DNA of 64,000 nucleotides from Macrostomum lignano (Eukaryota), in assembly GCA_002269645.1 (NCBI GenBank), contig NIVC01000208.1, forward strand, positions 1 through 64,000, written 5' to 3'. Numbering within the stretch: the first letter of the stretch is position 1; each line of letters opens with the position of its first letter. This document shows, in pieces, positions 23,682 to 62,084 of this stretch. The notes under the pieces were generated by a model that worked only from the letters and a program-made list of their open reading frames with translations, was not told where the DNA came from and made no database searches. A program made the position numbers and the translations under genes.

Positions 23682-24727
23682 TCACGGAGGCGGGCAGGTG
23701 TTGGCGTGGCGCGATGTGCCGTTAGCGCAGGGCATCTCGGCATAGACGTTTGTTCCCAGACAGGTCAGGTAGTGAAGATTCTTTGTGCAGTGCTTGCGGG
23801 CTGCTGGCATGCCGGTGCAGTTGTCGTTGGGAAACGAGCAGGTCAGCCTTCCTCGCACAGCCTGCGGGATGCAGTGGGCATGCACGTGACTGTACTTGGG
23901 CAGTTCCTGAGTTGCAGTCTCAAAATGTACTGATATACATTGGTCACAGTTAGTCACTAACTAACTATCTAACTCACCGAATAACTAACTAACTGACTAA
24001 CTAACTAACTAACTAACTGACTAACTAACTAACTGACTAACTAACTAACTAACTAACTAACTGACTAACTAACTAACTGACTAACTAACTAACTAACTAA
24101 CTAACTAACTAACTGACTAACTGACTAACTAACTAACTAACTAACTGACTAACTAACTAACTAACTAACTAACTAACTAACTAACTGACTAACTAACTGA
24201 CTAACTAACTAACTAACTAACTGACTAACTGACTAACTAACTAACTGACTAACTAACTGACTAACTGACTAACTAACTAACTAACTGACTAACTGACTAA
24301 CTAACTAACTAACTAACTAACTAACTAACTAACTGACTAACTGATTAACTGACTAACTAACTAACTAACTAACTAACTAACTAACCAACTAACTAACAAA
24401 CAAACTAACTGACTGATTAACCAACTAGCTCACTTCGCTGCTGCAGCCGCCGCCAGTCCACAACAGGGGGTACTGCTCCCCAACTGCGAAGTAGCAGACG
24501 CTGTTCTGTTTGTAAACGGCGCTACAGTTCGGCCGTATCGCGCACTCCACTGAGCAGGCGCGTGGGTCTCGAACCCCGGACACCCGGCTAAACAGGGTCA
24601 GGTTGTCCGGACAGCCGGCTACGATGGTCAGCTGGACGGTGAGACCGGCTGCTTCGGACAGGAGGCTCAGTAGGCAGCAGGCTGACCCAGCAACCAGCAA
24701 GGCCAGAGCGGCTTTATAAATGAGCAT
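23682..24727 (-). CDS. Family 1 copy A: secreted PAN/apple + Cys6 (CBM14-like) protein, about 172 aa, most divergent paralog
   Basis: Exon 1 24727-24434 (signal peptide; CSVECAIRPNCSAVYKQNSVCYF), GTGAGC donor; exon 2 23906-23682 (CSFPNDNC..HCTKNLHYLTC..MPCANGTSRHANTC). Exon 2 acceptor inferred. Confidence 0.75.
23955..24425. repeat. (CTAA/CTGA)n tetranucleotide microsatellite filling the copy A intron
   Basis: Direct reading. Confidence 0.95.
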
Positions 24728-25899
24728 TATCGGAGAGAAAGTTCAGAGAGCTCTTCAAACTGAGCATAAGAGTAATGAAGTTAAAGGGAATTTTCTAAGC
24801 TTTTATAGTTTTACATTTTCTATCTGCAGTGTAGTATCGGCAGGATTAATCCAGCCAATCAAATCACATGTAGAGCATTCAGTTGAGCTGTATTTGAAAT
24901 AGGCAGCTTCGCTCGTATCATTTACTATTAGTAGTTAAGTAAGCTAAATAGTTTGCATACTGAATTTTATTGTTTGCTAAATTTACACTTTATTGTTATC
25001 CGTGTATACTACTTAACATCGCTGGAGGTACAAAAACTCTAATGAGGCAAACCAACACCTGCTATAAGGAAATGAACCCGCCTATTCTACAAAAAATATT
25101 TTAAAGAGAATAAATTTTCATCTCAAGAATGGATCCTTTAAAAATAAATTTCCTGGCCACACCTGCAAACAAGAGGTGCCCCTGACTTTAACAATGCAAA
25201 TTTATAGGGAAAACGTGTTTTATTTGAGTTTTTCACAATAAAAATTCTACTACGCGAAATTGCTGTGAAAATTTCGTGAAAAAAGCCTTGAGAGGTGAAA
25301 AACGTCTCGATAAAAATTTTGTTCAATGCTGCTGCATAAACTACCCTCTTGGATGCAGCTCAGGGCTCTCTCTCAGGGCTCAGCCTTTGGAATTGGTGAC
25401 AAACTTGTCTTTCTTACCTTCTTTTTGTGATAGGAGAACATAAAACACACAAAGGGATCACAACTCACGCCTCTTCAGCCCGCCTTAGCGATTATTTCCT
25501 TTACTCAAGCCCCCTCATAAAAAACGCCAGTTTCCCCAGTCACAGTTCCTAACAATTCGGATTTGCAAGCACCTTTCTAACCAATAATTTATCCCAATTT
25601 TCTAACCAATATGAATACTTGTAAAGGGACAAGTCCGAGTATTCTGTGCAGGCTTTATAAAATTTGATTGTTCGCTTTCAAACTTAGCATAACAAACAAA
25701 ATCTATTTGAAATAACAAAGCAAGCGCATTAACATGCTGTACCAAACATTACTAATTATAAGTATAGTTAATTTTGGACGTGTCCTTTATTAAAGTGCGA
25801 GTTCCTTCAAGCAGGCATATCTTATCTTCAAAAGCTCTGAATATCTGATAGCTTCAAATCGGTTTGGTTTGGTTAGATTGTCTTCAGTGGTGGGCATCC

Positions 25900-26482
25900 T
25901 CATGGACAGGTGCCAGCGGAATAGGATGTGCCAGCTGAGCACGGCATCTGAACGTAGGCTCCATGATTGCAGCGCAGGTAGTGCACATCGCTGCTGCAGT
26001 CTCTCATGAAGTCGATGGTGCACGCCTGGCCATCTGTGAAGCAGACGGAGCTGGTGGTGGTGCTCATGTCAGCACCAGAGTTCGGAGGTGAAGTCGTGTT
26101 GACCAGTCTTCCTTCCACCACCTGAGTGGGTGCAACAATCAACGAAAAGGTTCTTAACAACAATGAAAGGCACTTATGGATTAGTTTAATATTACTGGTG
26201 TATTGAGCGCCGACTGACCTCGCTGCGGCAGTCCAGGGGTCTCCACAGCGCCTCATACTGAGCGGCAGTGGCCAGATAGCAAGTGCCGTCTCGCTTGAAC
26301 ACGGCGGTGCAGTTGGGTCGCACTGCGCACTCCACCGAGCAGGCACGAGGGTCTCGGACTCCGTTGACCTGCGACAGGTCGGTCACGTTTCCGGGGCAAC
26401 CGGAGACGACGCGGAAGCGGACGCAGACACCGGATGCGATGGACAGCAGGCTGAGCAGGCAGCAGGCAGTTTTTATAAACAT
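25900..26482 (-). CDS. Family 1 copy B: secreted PAN + short S/T linker + CBM14-like domain, about 161 aa
   Basis: Exon 1 26482-26219, 97-bp GT-AG intron, exon 2 26121-25900; DCSSDVHYLRCNHGAYVQMPCSAGTSYSAGTC. Confidence 0.85.
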
Positions 26483-27415
26483 TGCTTTTAGGGTTGGTTT
26501 TCAGAAGAAAATAATTTGTTTTGTTACTCAGGCTTTTTTTGACAGTTGAGGTTTGTTGGAGTTTCGTTTCCGTGCTAAACGAGTTATATGCTCAAAACAA
26601 GTGCTTAACAGCAAGTTCTGAGCGAATCAGCTTCTCAATGCCAATCAAAACATTGCATTGCCTTGAAACTTGAAGGCAACAGGCTCTAGCCTATCCTATT
26701 CTACACATGTAGACACACTATAACCCATTAATTCGTGAATACATGTAAGTCGAAAGCGGAGACTCAGCAACAGCGCCAGCAGAAACTTACATCTACGAAC
26801 ATCTTAGCTTGCTTGGTAACTGCATTGTGGCGGACTAAGCCCCAAATTAATGGCAGGTTTACATTGCAGATTTACATAGTATGTATAGTATAGCATACTA
26901 CACCTTAGTTTCCATTCTATTTTGTTAACTGTGCAGTCAAAGTTTAAGTATTTTCATATACATGTAATTCTTTATGGTAACACAAGGTGCAATGTGCATT
27001 CAGTTCCGACAACTGCGTGCGTTCTAAAACGGCCCTTTGCTTTCAATTCAATTCAAACTGTTTTTTTAATTAATACTCAATTCCGACAGTGGGCTACGAG
27101 TATTATATCCTAATCAAGGACAACTTGATAACTTAGATGAAACAACTGGATTAGGATCAAGGACAACTGTGGCTCAGAATGTGAGAAGTCAAATCGATTC
27201 CGAGAGTATTTATTCAATTCAGACCATAGATCAATGATTCGGACAGGCTGGTTTCTTCCTATATCCGAGCTTTAACTAATACTGTCTGTGGCCTGAATTG
27301 AAAATTTCGCCTCACTGAATTAAATACAAACTGTCGAAATCGGACTTGGACTTCTCGCGACTTATCGTCGCGTCACAAAGCAAGGGACAACTGAAAACCC
27401 CGTGAAATCCTCTGA

Positions 27416-60199: not shown

Positions 60200-61030
60200 T
60201 CAAAGCGTTCGAGAAGTGTCAGCTGTTGTTGGAGCAGTGTCAGCTGTTGTTGGAGCAGTGTCAGCTGTTGTTGGAGCAGTGTCAGCTGTTGTTGGAGCAG
60301 TGTCAGCTGTTGTTGGAGCAGTGTCAGCTGTTGTTGGAGCAGTGTCAGCTGTTGTTAGAGCAGTGGTTGAGGCTGGAGCAGTGGTTGAGGCTGGAGCAGT
60401 GGTTGAGGCTGGAGCAGTGGCTGAGGCTGGAGCAGTGGATGAGGCTGGAGCAGTGGATGAGGCTGGAGCAGTGGTTAAGGCTGGAGCAGTGGTTGAGGCT
60501 GGAGCAGTGGTTGAAGCTGGAGCAGTGTCAGTCTCGAAACTTTTTTCCTCAGTAATGTTGGATAGAAGCCGATCCTCAACGACCTAAAAATGAGTGAAAT
60601 TGGCTGAAACATTTCCGACATCTCAACTTGTTTTATAGAGATTGTTTTATTTGCAGGGAGAATATTTTGCATTACCCCAGCACGCACTTTTGCTTTTTTG
60701 CTGCAAAAATTATCCAAAAACAATTGAATCACAAGGCAAGAGATACCGACTGACCTCGCTGATGCAGTCCAGGGGTCTCCACAGCGCCTCATACTGAGCG
60801 GCAGTGGCCAGATAGCAGGTGCCGTCTCGCTTGAACACGGCGGTGCAGTTGGGTCGCACTGCGCACTCCACAGAGCAGACGCGAGGGTCTCGAACTCCGT
60901 TAACCTGAAACAGGTCGGTCACGTTTCCGGCGCAACCGCAGACGATGCGGAAGCGGACGCAGACGCCGGACACGACGGACAGCAGGCTGAGCAGGCAGCA
61001 GGCCCGAACAAGCATACCGTAACGATTCAT
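60200..61030 (-). CDS. Family 1 copy H: secreted PAN + long Thr/Ala/Pro mucin-like tail, no Cys6 domain, about 219 aa
   Basis: Exon 1 61030-60755, 171-bp intron, exon 2 60583-60200 open: (TAPAST)x9, (TAPTTAD)x7, then TSRTL* followed directly by AATAAA. Confidence 0.75.
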
Positions 61031-61829
61031 GTATGTGTAAGATTATTTTTCTTTAACTAGATCTAGTGCATTAGTTAATCGGGATAAACTGCATGTCGAA
61101 TTTTACAGATTAAATGAGCGACTTTCGGCCGATGGTAGTAGCGAGAATTTAAAGCTTGCTGCAACGTTCAGGTTGAGCGAAACTTGTTTGCAGCGTTGTC
61201 AGGCATTCCTCTCTAAGCTTCGAAATGTATTTTTGGTCACGGATGCTGCTATGTGCCTGTGCAGCATTGTCACAACTGTCACACTATTGGAGTTGGAGGA
61301 TTGGAGCGCATCATTTTCTGCTTGCTTAGAGAGGCGTGACCAGTGGCGCATGTCAATCCTGCAAACATACATCGGGTTTCCATTGTTTCCACTTGTTTCC
61401 ACCAGTAGAAATTTCATTTTTGGCGAAATCTCAGAGTTACATAAACTTTCTTTTTGTGATGATTCCTCATTTGCTTTGCAAAACCATTGACAAAAAGCTG
61501 CTAGAAGAAAATTTCTATCGTATGACGTGTGACGTTGTTATCCGTTGATGTAATGTAAGAGTACATATTTTTCATCGACGTCAATGTCGTCAGGTTGCTG
61601 TACGGAAAAGTGGATGACATGATTTTGTTTTACCAAGATTGGGCTACATTTAGGGAGCTCAAAAAACTAACATGACATTTCGACCTGTCGAATATTTGAT
61701 ACAACTCGCTTTAGTAAGCTTGTTTTAAAGGCAAAGTCTGAATTACCTTTCGGAAGAAAATAATTCATAATACGTTTTTCCGTTCAATAACGTTAAGTAT
61801 CAAAAAATTGCTTAACTACTTGTACTGGC

Positions 61830-62084
61830 ATGAAGCCATCGTCGCAGGCCAGCGTCTCCTACCGACTCTGCGTCGGCTCCGGTTGCCCCGGAAACGTGAC
61901 CGGCCTGTCGCAGGTCAACGGGGTTCGAGACCCTCGCGCCTGCTCGGTGGAGTGCGCAGTGCGACCCAACTGCACCGCCGTGTTCAAGCGAGACGGCACT
62001 TGCTATCTGGCCACGGCCGCTCAGTATGAGTACTTTGTGGATAACAAAAACGTCAGAAACAGCCACTACTCGAGCATCATCTAA
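61830..62084 (+). pseudogene. Family 1 copy I: single-exon PAN-only ORF lacking the signal-peptide core (pseudogene or intracellular variant)
   Basis: MKPSSQASVSYRLCVGSGCPGN is 11 residues shorter than copy G before the first PAN Cys; homology ends at AAQYE. Confidence 0.6.

What the first reader, a model, noticed from the sequence alone, without database searches (positions are those of the whole stretch)
23682..62084. Interleaved cluster of two secreted PAN/apple-domain families evolving by birth and death
Seen: about 38 kb holds 10 copies or fragments of family 1 (PAN-stalk-Cys6) and 4 of family 2 (PAN-glycine-rich), mostly on the minus strand, alternating, each with family-specific conserved flanks. 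Established: PAN/apple modules mediate protein or glycan binding, and fast-turnover clusters of secreted binding proteins are typical of immunity, mucus and adhesion systems. Inference: one modular recognition or mucus system in which a PAN head is paired with either a chitin-binding or an ALK/LTK-like effector. I do not recognise this pairing as a described locus.
Basis: partly seen in the sequence, partly recalled or inferred. Interest (0 to 1): 0.85.

Follow-up and report, generated by a model that had tools for sequence, protein, structure and literature searches.

The report
Flatworm cluster of two secreted binding-protein families
This stretch of the flatworm Macrostomum lignano genome holds a real, fast-turning-over tandem cluster of two lineage-specific secreted protein families; their functions are untested, and the interleaving comes from block duplication rather than shown functional pairing.

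Summary
tblastn finds 10 family-1 head exons or fragments and 4 family-2 copies between 23.7 and 62.1 kb. An eleventh family-1 piece lies at the window edge. The window is Macrostomum lignano: the spliced copy c2 is identical to UniProt A0A1I8GBE5.

Family 1 is a 2-exon gene: signal peptide, PAN-like head, variable Thr/Ala/Pro stalk, and a six-cysteine CBM14/CBM19-type domain. Three copies are intact; the others are truncated, frameshifted or fragments.

Family 2 is a 4-exon gene: signal peptide, a four-cysteine PAN-like head, and the complete ALK/LTK ligand-binding TG domain (Foldseek E 7e-12). It has no transmembrane or kinase part. Two copies are intact, one lacks a start codon, and one is the last exon only.

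The PAN assignment is only weakly supported, and the two heads are not demonstrably the same module. The interleaving is explained by duplication of a composite block (F1 fragment, (ATAG)n, F2 gene), with added mosaicism from gene conversion or recombination. The TG domain is a recognition module wherever it has been studied, not an effector. PAN+TG proteins are also predicted in corals. Function is untested.

Verdict: a real, ordinary birth-and-death cluster containing an uncharacterised kinase-less TG protein class. Interest is moderate.

The parts
23682..24727 (-). F1 copy c1. Intact and divergent, with no stalk. Exon 1 is 24727-24434 and exon 2 is 23861-23682. The intron is filled by an (ACTA)n array.
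   Evidence: 98% identical to UniProt A0A1I8GJG2 (P0122), which gives the splice CSSE|AVRGRL.
25900..26482 (-). F1 copy c2. Intact, 161 aa. Exon 1 is 26482-26219 and exon 2 is 26121-25900.
   Evidence: The spliced product is identical to UniProt A0A1I8GBE5 (P0130).
28944..29694 (-). F1 copy c3, a pseudogene. The head exon is cut at 29694/29695 and has no start or signal peptide. A 5-nt deletion shifts the frame at the start of exon 2. It carries a long (TSATAP)n stalk and a Cys6 domain.
   Evidence: The truncation point coincides with the end of the F2 duplication block 29695-31747.
30373..31868 (-). F2 copy A. Exons 2-4 are intact (31731-31378, 31272-30952, 30863-30373). The exon-1 relic (about 31868-31826) has TGA in the homologous frame and no in-frame ATG.
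35062..36567 (-). F2 copy B. Intact 4-exon gene: 36567-36525, 36419-36069, 35975-35655, 35567-35062.
   Evidence: All splice sites are GT/AG. N-terminus is MAEQCLSLKLAFLFVFCSPVLRVQG.
38345..38446 (-). F1 fragment c4: the 3' third of the head exon, with an in-frame stop.
   Evidence: Part of block 37986-38487, which matches 55350-55870.
39689..39820 (-). F1 fragment c5: the head core, with a stop.
42318..42814 (-). F2 copy C: the last exon only, with its acceptor kept. The upstream exons are absent.
44496..45172 (-). F1 copy c6. Intact, 188 aa. Exon 1 is 45172-44903 and exon 2 is 44792-44496.
50493..51999 (-). F2 copy D. Intact 4-exon gene: 51999-51957, 51851-51504, 51395-51072, 50983-50493.
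55728..55814 (-). F1 fragment c7, the counterpart of c4 in the duplicated composite block.
57165..58441 (+). F1 copy c8, a pseudogene. It has a frameshift in the head exon, a (TPDTAT)n stalk, and a Cys6 domain with an in-frame stop.
60200..61030 (-). F1 copy c9. Exon 1 is intact (61030-60755). Exon 2 (60583-60200) encodes only a Thr/Ala/Pro stalk and then stops. No Cys6 domain.
61830..62084 (+). F1 fragment c10. The head exon has a degraded signal peptide and is truncated after AAQYE.
63937..63999 (-). Cys6 exon of a further F1 copy (c11), running off the window.

Best explanation
This is a lineage-specific tandem gene cluster of the free-living flatworm Macrostomum lignano. It holds two unrelated families of small secreted binding proteins.

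Family 1 is peritrophin-like. It has a signal peptide, a PAN-like head, an O-glycosylatable Thr/Ala/Pro stalk of very variable length (0 to about 100 residues), and a six-cysteine CBM14/CBM19-type chitin or glycan-binding domain. I infer that it cross-links or coats glycan fibres in an extracellular matrix or mucus.

Family 2 has a signal peptide, a four-cysteine PAN-like head, and a complete ALK/LTK-type TG domain (TNF-like plus polyglycine-II lattice). It has no membrane anchor and no kinase. I infer that it is a soluble two-module recognition protein. Its TG framework is conserved, and variation sits in five short loops.

The interleaving is a by-product of how the locus grew. A composite block (F1 fragment, (ATAG)n, F2 gene, 3' flank) was duplicated, and partial duplications or conversion tracts followed. 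This left many dead copies.

Shown: gene structures, domain identities, copy states and duplication blocks. Inferred: secretion, glycan binding, matrix or mucus role, and any cooperation between the families.
For: - Organism: c2 equals UniProt A0A1I8GBE5 of M. lignano. All close hits are M. lignano.
- Copies.
- Gene models with GT/AG introns and intact ORFs.
- Hydrophobic N-termini ending in ASG|V or VQG|A.
- Cys6 domain: CBM_19 scores 23.1 bits against a cut-off of 20.1. CBM_14 and CBM_19 each hit 3 of 4 copies. UniProt names one member 'CBM_19 domain-containing'.
- TG domain: in the AF2 model the stretch aligned to the start of the TG domain has pLDDT 80-92. The top 21 PDB fold hits are all ALK/LTK, with E from 7e-12 to 1e-6.
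- The TG domain is a recognition module in phage tail fibres and ALK (PMC9608196), and there are 83 viral fold hits.
- Selection: the TG framework has pN/pS 0.26-0.30, while the five variable loops have 0.8-1.9.
- Block duplication: 34999-37216 matches 50425-52658, 37986-38487 matches 55350-55870, and 29695-31747 matches 49812-51867 at 94%.
- Mosaicism in F1: head-exon pS is 0.12-0.16, but Cys6-exon pS is 0.7-0.87 for the same gene pairs.
Against: - There are no expression data, so transcription, trans-splicing and tissue are unknown.
- PAN assignment is sub-threshold for F1, and Pfam finds nothing for the F2 head.
- The F1 structure model is unreliable (pLDDT 47) and its fold search was meaningless.
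- Overall dN/dS of about 0.5 is only moderate constraint.
- The loop-versus-framework contrast was defined after looking at the data.
- Chitin binding is inferred from a borderline profile match.
- I found no evidence on whether M. lignano makes chitin.
Confidence: 0.6

Rival explanations
1. Both families are reproduction-related secreted proteins, for example seminal-fluid, eggshell or cement-gland components. Their turnover would reflect sexual selection rather than mucus or immune functions.
For: They are lineage-restricted. F1 has only two 90%-identity clusters among 5.8 billion proteins, and nothing outside M. lignano in an exhaustive search of 1.84 billion representatives. Other pointers are tandem expansion, many pseudogenes, and moderate dN/dS with variable loops. 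From my own knowledge, rapid evolution of reproduction-related genes is documented in Macrostomum; I did not test this here.
Against: No expression evidence points either way. No paper in the searchable library links Macrostomum to PAN/apple or glycine-rich domain proteins. Peritrophin-like architecture is more typical of gut or cuticular matrices.
Confidence: 0.2
2. The two families form one functional, co-regulated recognition system.
For: The two families are tightly linked in one 40-kb cluster and share the minus-strand orientation. Both heads have the C-x3-C-x4-5-C-x9-11-C core and align in register. A third M. lignano protein joins an F1-type head to a Laminin_G_3 domain, which shows that the head is shuffled.
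Against: The heads are not significantly similar (hhalign E 0.08). The composite-block duplication explains the interleaving without any functional link. The upstream flanks of the two families did not come up as similar to each other in the self-comparison.
Confidence: 0.12
3. F2 proteins are soluble decoys or modulators of ALK-type signalling. They would bind an ALKAL-like cytokine through the TG domain.
For: The fold matches the ligand-binding TG domain of ALK/LTK, including ligand complexes. The protein is secreted and lacks a kinase.
Against: Sequence identity to ALK/LTK is only 18-25%. The family is expanded, with hypervariable loops. That fits diverse targets better than one conserved cytokine. 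Related TG domains occur in coral proteins and in phage fibres with unrelated ligands.
Confidence: 0.05
4. The whole array is decaying, non-functional duplicated DNA in a repeat-rich polyploid genome.
For: 9 of the 14 copies in the finding are visibly defective. The locus is riddled with mini- and microsatellites.
Against: Five copies keep complete ORFs, start codons, signal peptides and all splice sites. The TG framework has pN/pS of about 0.27. F1 cysteines are invariant across copies that are near saturation at synonymous sites.
Confidence: 0.05

Closest known systems
ALK/LTK receptor tyrosine kinase ligand-binding TG supradomain (Pfam PF12810; PDB 7NX1, 7LRZ, 7LIR)
   Same: The C-terminal ~300 residues of F2 match the TNF-like plus glycine-rich (polyglycine-II lattice) fold. 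Foldseek gives E 7e-12 and probability 1.0, and all top 21 hits are ALK/LTK. The conserved Gly-run framework is present.
   Different: F2 has no transmembrane segment, no kinase, and no MAM/LDLa/EGF modules. It is secreted and preceded by a PAN-like head. It is a tandemly expanded family with variable loops. UniProt's name 'receptor protein-tyrosine kinase' for fragments of this family is an annotation artefact.
Predicted scleractinian coral PAN-(EGF)-TG proteins (e.g. Pocillopora verrucosa 'putative lysozyme-like protein' P0033, Porites harrisoni P0071, Montipora foliosa P0036)
   Same: They are secreted, kinase-less proteins with an N-terminal PAN domain and a C-terminal TG domain. The TG part is 45-46% identical to F2.
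   Different: The coral heads are clear Pfam PAN_1 matches and often carry EGF modules. The F2 head is not detected by Pfam, and it aligns to the coral heads only on the cysteine core (E 0.024). None of these proteins has been characterised.
Peritrophins and other CBM14 chitin-binding mucin-like proteins
   Same: F1 combines a six-cysteine CBM14/CBM19-type domain with a Thr/Ala/Pro-rich mucin-like repeat region.
   Different: F1 has a single CBM rather than an array, and it adds a PAN-like head. Profile scores are borderline. It occurs in a flatworm, where I could not establish whether there is a chitin substrate.
PAN/apple-domain lectins and adhesins (e.g. Sarcocystis SML-2 2YIP, apicomplexan MIC4, nematode PAN proteins)
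   Same: Both have the four-cysteine core motif. The predicted F2 head has a strand-helix-strand topology. There is a weak fold hit to SML-2 (E 0.77) and sub-threshold PAN_1/PAN_3 hits for F1.
   Different: No significant profile or structure match was obtained here.
Phage tail-fibre tips with TNF-like plus glycine-rich domains (cyanophage Pam3 gp24; S16 gp38-type adhesins)
   Same: The fold class is the same, and it is used for target recognition (PMC9608196; 83 viral fold hits).
   Different: The phage proteins are trimeric fibre proteins of viruses. There is no PAN head, and no evidence of recent common ancestry with the flatworm genes, which contain introns.

Membership tests
PAN/Apple domain (Pfam clan PAN; PROSITE PS50948) | Significant match to a PAN-family profile | tested here: inconclusive
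   F1 head: PAN_1 E 0.011 (16 bits against a cut-off of 21.4), PAN_3 E 0.023, KIAA0319_N E 0.014. F2 head: no Pfam hit at E<=10. Profile searches of PDB sequences found nothing. UniProt's automatic names call members of both families 'Apple domain-containing', but a near-identical F2 member is named 'Jacalin-type'.
PAN/Apple domain (Pfam clan PAN; PROSITE PS50948) | Conserved cysteine core (C-x3-C ... C ... C) within a domain of about 70-100 residues | tested here: met
   F1: C-SVE-C-AVRPN-C-x9-C is invariant in all copies. F2: C-LAK-C-QRVx-C-x11-C is invariant. The two align in register with each other and with coral PAN_1 heads.
PAN/Apple domain (Pfam clan PAN; PROSITE PS50948) | PAN fold: a central helix packed on an antiparallel sheet | tested here: inconclusive
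   F2 head in the AF2 model has pLDDT 60-80, with the order strand-helix-strand-strand-strand. The only PAN hit is SML-2 2YIP, at E 0.77 and probability 0.51. The F1 model has pLDDT 47 and its fold search was meaningless.
CBM14/CBM19 chitin-binding domains (Pfam PF01607, PF03427) | Profile match | tested here: met
   CBM_19 scores 23.1 bits against a cut-off of 20.1 for copy c3. CBM_14 (best E 1.6e-5) and CBM_19 each hit 3 of 4 copies. The match is borderline, and several copies fall below the cut-off.
CBM14/CBM19 chitin-binding domains (Pfam PF01607, PF03427) | Six conserved cysteines in about 50-60 residues | tested here: met
   All six Cys are invariant in c1, c2, c3 and c6, despite 28-45% identity to the reference copy c3.
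CBM14/CBM19 chitin-binding domains (Pfam PF01607, PF03427) | Binds chitin | not testable with these tools
   This needs a pull-down or glycan array with recombinant protein.
ALK/LTK TG (TNF-like + glycine-rich) domain, PF12810 | Fold match to solved ALK/LTK ectodomain structures | tested here: met
   Foldseek against PDB: 21 hits at E<=1e-3, all ALK/LTK. The best is 7NX1, with E 7.4e-12 and target-normalised TM 0.60.
ALK/LTK TG (TNF-like + glycine-rich) domain, PF12810 | Pfam PF12810 match above the gathering score | tested here: inconclusive
   Window copy A scores 15 bits and P0001 scores 21.1 bits, both below the 24.5 cut-off. Close paralogues carry precomputed PF12810. Homologues at 45-50% identity score 30-34 bits.
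ALK/LTK receptor tyrosine kinase family | Transmembrane helix and intracellular tyrosine kinase domain | tested here: not met
   The ORF ends 10-15 residues after the TG domain in A, B, C and D. The list of ORFs of at least 70 aa across the cluster shows nothing that looks like a kinase. F2 is therefore not an ALK/LTK family member, only a carrier of the same domain.
Birth-and-death multigene family | Tandem paralogues of different ages together with pseudogenes and fragments | tested here: met
   Pairwise pS ranges from 0.05 to above 0.8. 9 of the 14 copies in the finding are defective.
Birth-and-death multigene family | Little homogenisation between copies | tested here: not met
   The F1 head exon is far more similar between copies (pS 0.12-0.16) than the tail exon of the same genes (pS 0.7-0.87). 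F2 copy A matches copy D at 94% over a sharply bounded 2-kb tract. The locus therefore mixes birth-and-death with gene conversion or recombination.

The most novel reading that the evidence does not exclude
F2 would represent an uncharacterised animal protein class, shared with corals: soluble, kinase-less TG-domain receptors. In them the polyglycine-II scaffold presents hypervariable loops for diversified target recognition, much as phage tail-fibre tips do. If so, they would be a new kind of invertebrate recognition molecule. They might also resemble the free-standing form from which the ALK/LTK ectodomain was recruited.
Probability: 0.2. Interest if true: 0.7.

Novelty: new variant of a known kind. 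Interest (0 to 1): 0.42.

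Why it matters
The ALK/LTK TG domain has been studied in the receptor kinases and, as a related fold, in phage fibre tips. A review of natural glycine-rich polyproline-II bundle domains lists no secreted animal proteins of this kind. A compact flatworm family of secreted PAN-like-plus-TG proteins, with coral counterparts, gives small and tractable subjects for two questions. What does this unusual fold bind outside receptor signalling? 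How was it recruited into ALK? M. lignano supports RNAi, in situ hybridisation and transgenesis (my own knowledge), so the questions can be tested. The cluster is also a clear example of mixed block duplication, exon-level conversion and decay. Otherwise it is an ordinary lineage-specific tandem cluster.

Tried and rejected
- Pfam on the F2 head gave no hit.
- Profile searches of PDB sequences with the F1 head, the F2 head, an enlarged F1-head alignment and the Cys6 domain gave nothing, or only chance hits such as PTPN14 and proline racemase.
- The AF2 model of F1 (P0122 plus paralogues) had pLDDT 47. Its Foldseek hits were mostly antibody and nanobody chains at E>1 and meaningless.
- F2 exon 1. 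The first candidate (ATG at 36556/51988) is phase 2 and incompatible with the acceptor. A start codon donated by the spliced leader also gives the wrong frame; that check relies on the leader sequence recalled from memory. The exon was resolved as ATG 36567/51999, phase 1.
- The look-up of encoding contigs had no record for P0122 or P0002, so other M. lignano loci could not be fetched.
- The exhaustive phmmer search with P0122 returned two bacterial Ig/fn3 repeat proteins. I judged these to be compositional false positives.
- Literature searches for Macrostomum with apple, PAN, glycine-rich, chitin-binding or chitin synthase, and for PF12810, found nothing relevant.
- Horizontal acquisition of F2 from viruses was considered and rejected. 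The genes have three introns, and the family has cnidarian relatives.

Full report
**What the window is**

The window is eukaryotic, AT-rich and full of mini- and microsatellites. The spliced product of one family-1 gene is identical to UniProt A0A1I8GBE5 of Macrostomum lignano. All close protein hits are from M. lignano. The window is therefore from this flatworm.

**Check of the observation**

tblastn with one representative exon of each type confirms the counts.
- Ten family-1 (F1) head exons or fragments lie between 24.4 and 62.0 kb. Eight are on the minus strand.
- Four family-2 (F2) copies are present, all on the minus strand.
- E-values run from 1e-9 to 1e-99, so this is far beyond chance.
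- A further F1 tail exon at 63937-63999 shows that the cluster continues past the window.
- On the left the cluster is bounded by a nuclear-receptor gene (zf-C4 and ligand-binding domain).
- 'Alternating' is only loosely true. The order is F1x5, F2, F1, F2, F1x2, F2x2, F1x3.

**Anatomy of F1**

F1 is a two-exon gene with a GT/AG intron of about 100-570 bp.
- Exon 1 encodes a hydrophobic signal-like peptide and a head of about 70 residues. Its cysteine core, C-SVE-C-AVRPN-C-x9-C, is invariant.
- Exon 2 encodes a Thr/Ala/Pro-rich repeat stalk and a six-cysteine domain. The stalk ranges from none (c1) to about 100 residues (c3, c8, c9).
- The six-cysteine domain matches CBM_19 above Pfam's cut-off in one copy. 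CBM_14 and CBM_19 each hit 3 of 4 copies, and the best CBM_14 E-value is 1.6e-5.
- The head gives only sub-threshold hits to three PAN-clan families: PAN_1 E 0.011, PAN_3 and KIAA0319_N.

Copy states:
- c1, c2 and c6 are intact.
- c9 has a head and stalk but no Cys6 domain.
- c3 is 5'-truncated and frameshifted.
- c8 is frameshifted and carries a stop.
- c4, c5, c7 and c10 are fragments.

F1 is extremely restricted. Only two 90%-identity clusters were found among 5.8 billion proteins. An exhaustive HMMER search of 1.84 billion representatives added two more credible proteins with an F1-type head. One is a confirmed M. lignano gene joined to a Laminin_G_3 domain. The source of the other is not named.

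**Anatomy of F2**

F2 is a four-exon gene.
- A 43-nt exon 1 (ATG at 36567 in B and 51999 in D) ends in phase 1 with a GTAAGT donor. It joins exon 2 to give MAEQCLSLKLAFLFV(F/C)CS(P/L)VLRVQG, a signal-like N-terminus.
- Exon 2 encodes a head of about 100 residues with the core C-LAK-C-QRVx-C-x11-C.
- Exons 3 and 4 encode about 270 glycine-rich residues.

An AlphaFold model of the 85%-identical paralogue P0001 was moderately confident overall. It had pLDDT 80-92 over the stretch (about residues 160-250) that aligns to the start of the TG domain. In a PDB fold search its top 21 hits were all ALK or LTK ligand-binding TG domains, with E from 7e-12 to 1e-6.

The ORF stops just after this domain, so there is no membrane anchor or kinase. 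F2 is not an ALK/LTK family member. UniProt's name 'receptor protein-tyrosine kinase' for fragments of the family is an artefact.

The head gives no Pfam hit. Its predicted strand-helix-strand topology and a weak hit to the PAN lectin SML-2 (E 0.77) are compatible with PAN but do not prove it.

Copy states: B and D are complete. A has intact exons 2-4, but its exon-1 relic has TGA in frame and no usable ATG. C is the last exon alone.

**How the locus evolved**

Self-comparison shows that an F1 fragment, an (ATAG)n array and an F2 gene with its 3' flank were duplicated as one block. The matches are 37986-38487 with 55350-55870, and 34999-37216 with 50425-52658.

F2 copy A matches copy D at 94% over a sharply bounded tract (29695-31747 with 49812-51867). 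That tract ends exactly where F1 copy c3 is truncated.

Within F1, the head exons of c2, c6 and c9 differ at few synonymous sites (pS 0.12-0.16). The tail exons of the same genes approach saturation (pS 0.7-0.87). The head exon has therefore been homogenised or exchanged.

Block duplication explains the interleaving. The process mixes birth-and-death with gene conversion or recombination.

**Selection**

Whole-gene dN/dS is about 0.5 in both families. In F2, variation among nine paralogues is concentrated in five short loops between invariant glycine runs. The TG framework has pN/pS 0.26-0.30, and the loops have 0.8-1.9. The loops were chosen after inspecting the data, so this contrast is only indicative. 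It does show that the intact copies are, or recently were, under purifying selection.

**Comparison with known systems**

The TG domain binds cytokines in ALK/LTK. A related TNF-like plus glycine-rich tip recognises the host in cyanophage Pam3 (PMC9608196). Eighty-three predicted viral structures match the F2 model. The TG domain is therefore best seen as a recognition module, not an effector.

Predicted coral proteins carry Pfam PAN_1 and ALK_LTK_GRD above threshold, often with EGF modules between. The PAN-plus-TG architecture is thus not unique to this locus, although it is uncharacterised. A review of natural glycine-rich polyproline-II bundles does not list such secreted animal proteins.

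The F2 head aligns to the coral PAN heads, and to the F1 head, only on the cysteine core (E 0.024 and 0.08). The idea of one PAN head paired with two alternative tails is therefore not supported.

No paper in the searchable library describes these Macrostomum genes.

**Most likely function (inferred)**

F1 is probably a peritrophin-like secreted glycoprotein. It would bind chitin or another glycan through its Cys6 domain and a second partner through its head, across a mucin-like spacer of variable length. F2 is probably a soluble two-module recognition protein whose specificity lies in the TG loops.

Tissue and role are open: gut or epidermal matrix, mucus, immunity or reproduction. Rivals are a reproductive role, a truly coupled F1-F2 system, an ALK-ligand decoy, and a fully dead array. 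Expression mapping, in situ hybridisation and binding assays would separate them.

**Verdict**

This is a real, lineage-specific tandem cluster of an ordinary evolutionary kind. It contains an uncharacterised kinase-less TG-domain protein family of moderate interest.

Noticed in passing
window 14364-20900 (+): A nuclear hormone receptor gene borders the cluster. Pfam finds zf-C4 in the ORF at 15676-16100 and Hormone_recep in the ORF at 18441-18956. Several long minisatellites lie between its coding ORFs: a 35-bp unit x30 at 14654-15695, a 26-bp unit x37 at 16093-17069, and 40-bp units at 17652-18351.
   Followed up: partly
window 4273-5343 (-): ORFs with a weak DUF4371 match (E 0.0012, below the cut-off). 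This may be a relic of a hAT-type transposase.
   Followed up: partly
window 54088-55034 and 37300-37653; 23956-24427: A 947-bp (ATAG)n microsatellite lies between F1 fragment c7 and F2 copy D. A shorter repeat translating to the same SIYL unit sits at the corresponding position upstream of F2 copy B. The intron of F1 copy c1 is almost entirely an (ACTA)n array of 472 bp.
   Followed up: partly
window 33072-33561 and 40190-41449: Related minisatellites (units containing CCTCCCTGCATCTCT, 19-40 bp) lie downstream of F2 copies B and C. They seem to be part of an older, larger duplication unit.
   Followed up: no
proteins P0003-P0005 and several phage proteins: UniProt names kinase-less proteins 'receptor protein-tyrosine kinase', apparently because they carry the PF12810 glycine-rich domain. 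A near-identical F2 member is named 'Jacalin-type lectin domain-containing'. These automatic names are unreliable for this family.
   Followed up: partly
protein P0125 (M. lignano BOX15_Mlig013932g1) and P0126: An F1-type head (…C-IVE-C-AVRPN-C…) is fused to a Laminin_G_3 / concanavalin-like domain in another M. lignano gene. The F1 head therefore occurs with at least two different tails in this genome.
   Followed up: partly
F2 copies A, B, D, variable loops (e.g. window 30790-30830 in A): In the five hypervariable loops, synonymous divergence is also raised in pairs involving copy B (pS 0.27 against 0.09-0.13 in the rest of the TG domain). This could mean patchy gene conversion that spares the loops, or old loop alleles. 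It remains unexplained.
   Followed up: no
locus L001 6001-6864 (ENA ERZ25067872 contig, 509 kb): The many TG-only proteins of about 300 aa from ENA 'metagenome' assemblies closely resemble the coral TG sequences. The one locus I looked at sits in sparse, 40% GC, eukaryote-like DNA next to a DUF3504 ORF. They are probably single-exon cnidarian-type genes rather than bacterial ones.
   Followed up: partly
Foldseek BFVD hits: The TG-like fold is widespread in predicted structures of cyanophage and Caulobacter-phage virion proteins. It also appears in giant-virus 'glycine-rich' or 'collagen-like' proteins.
   Followed up: partly
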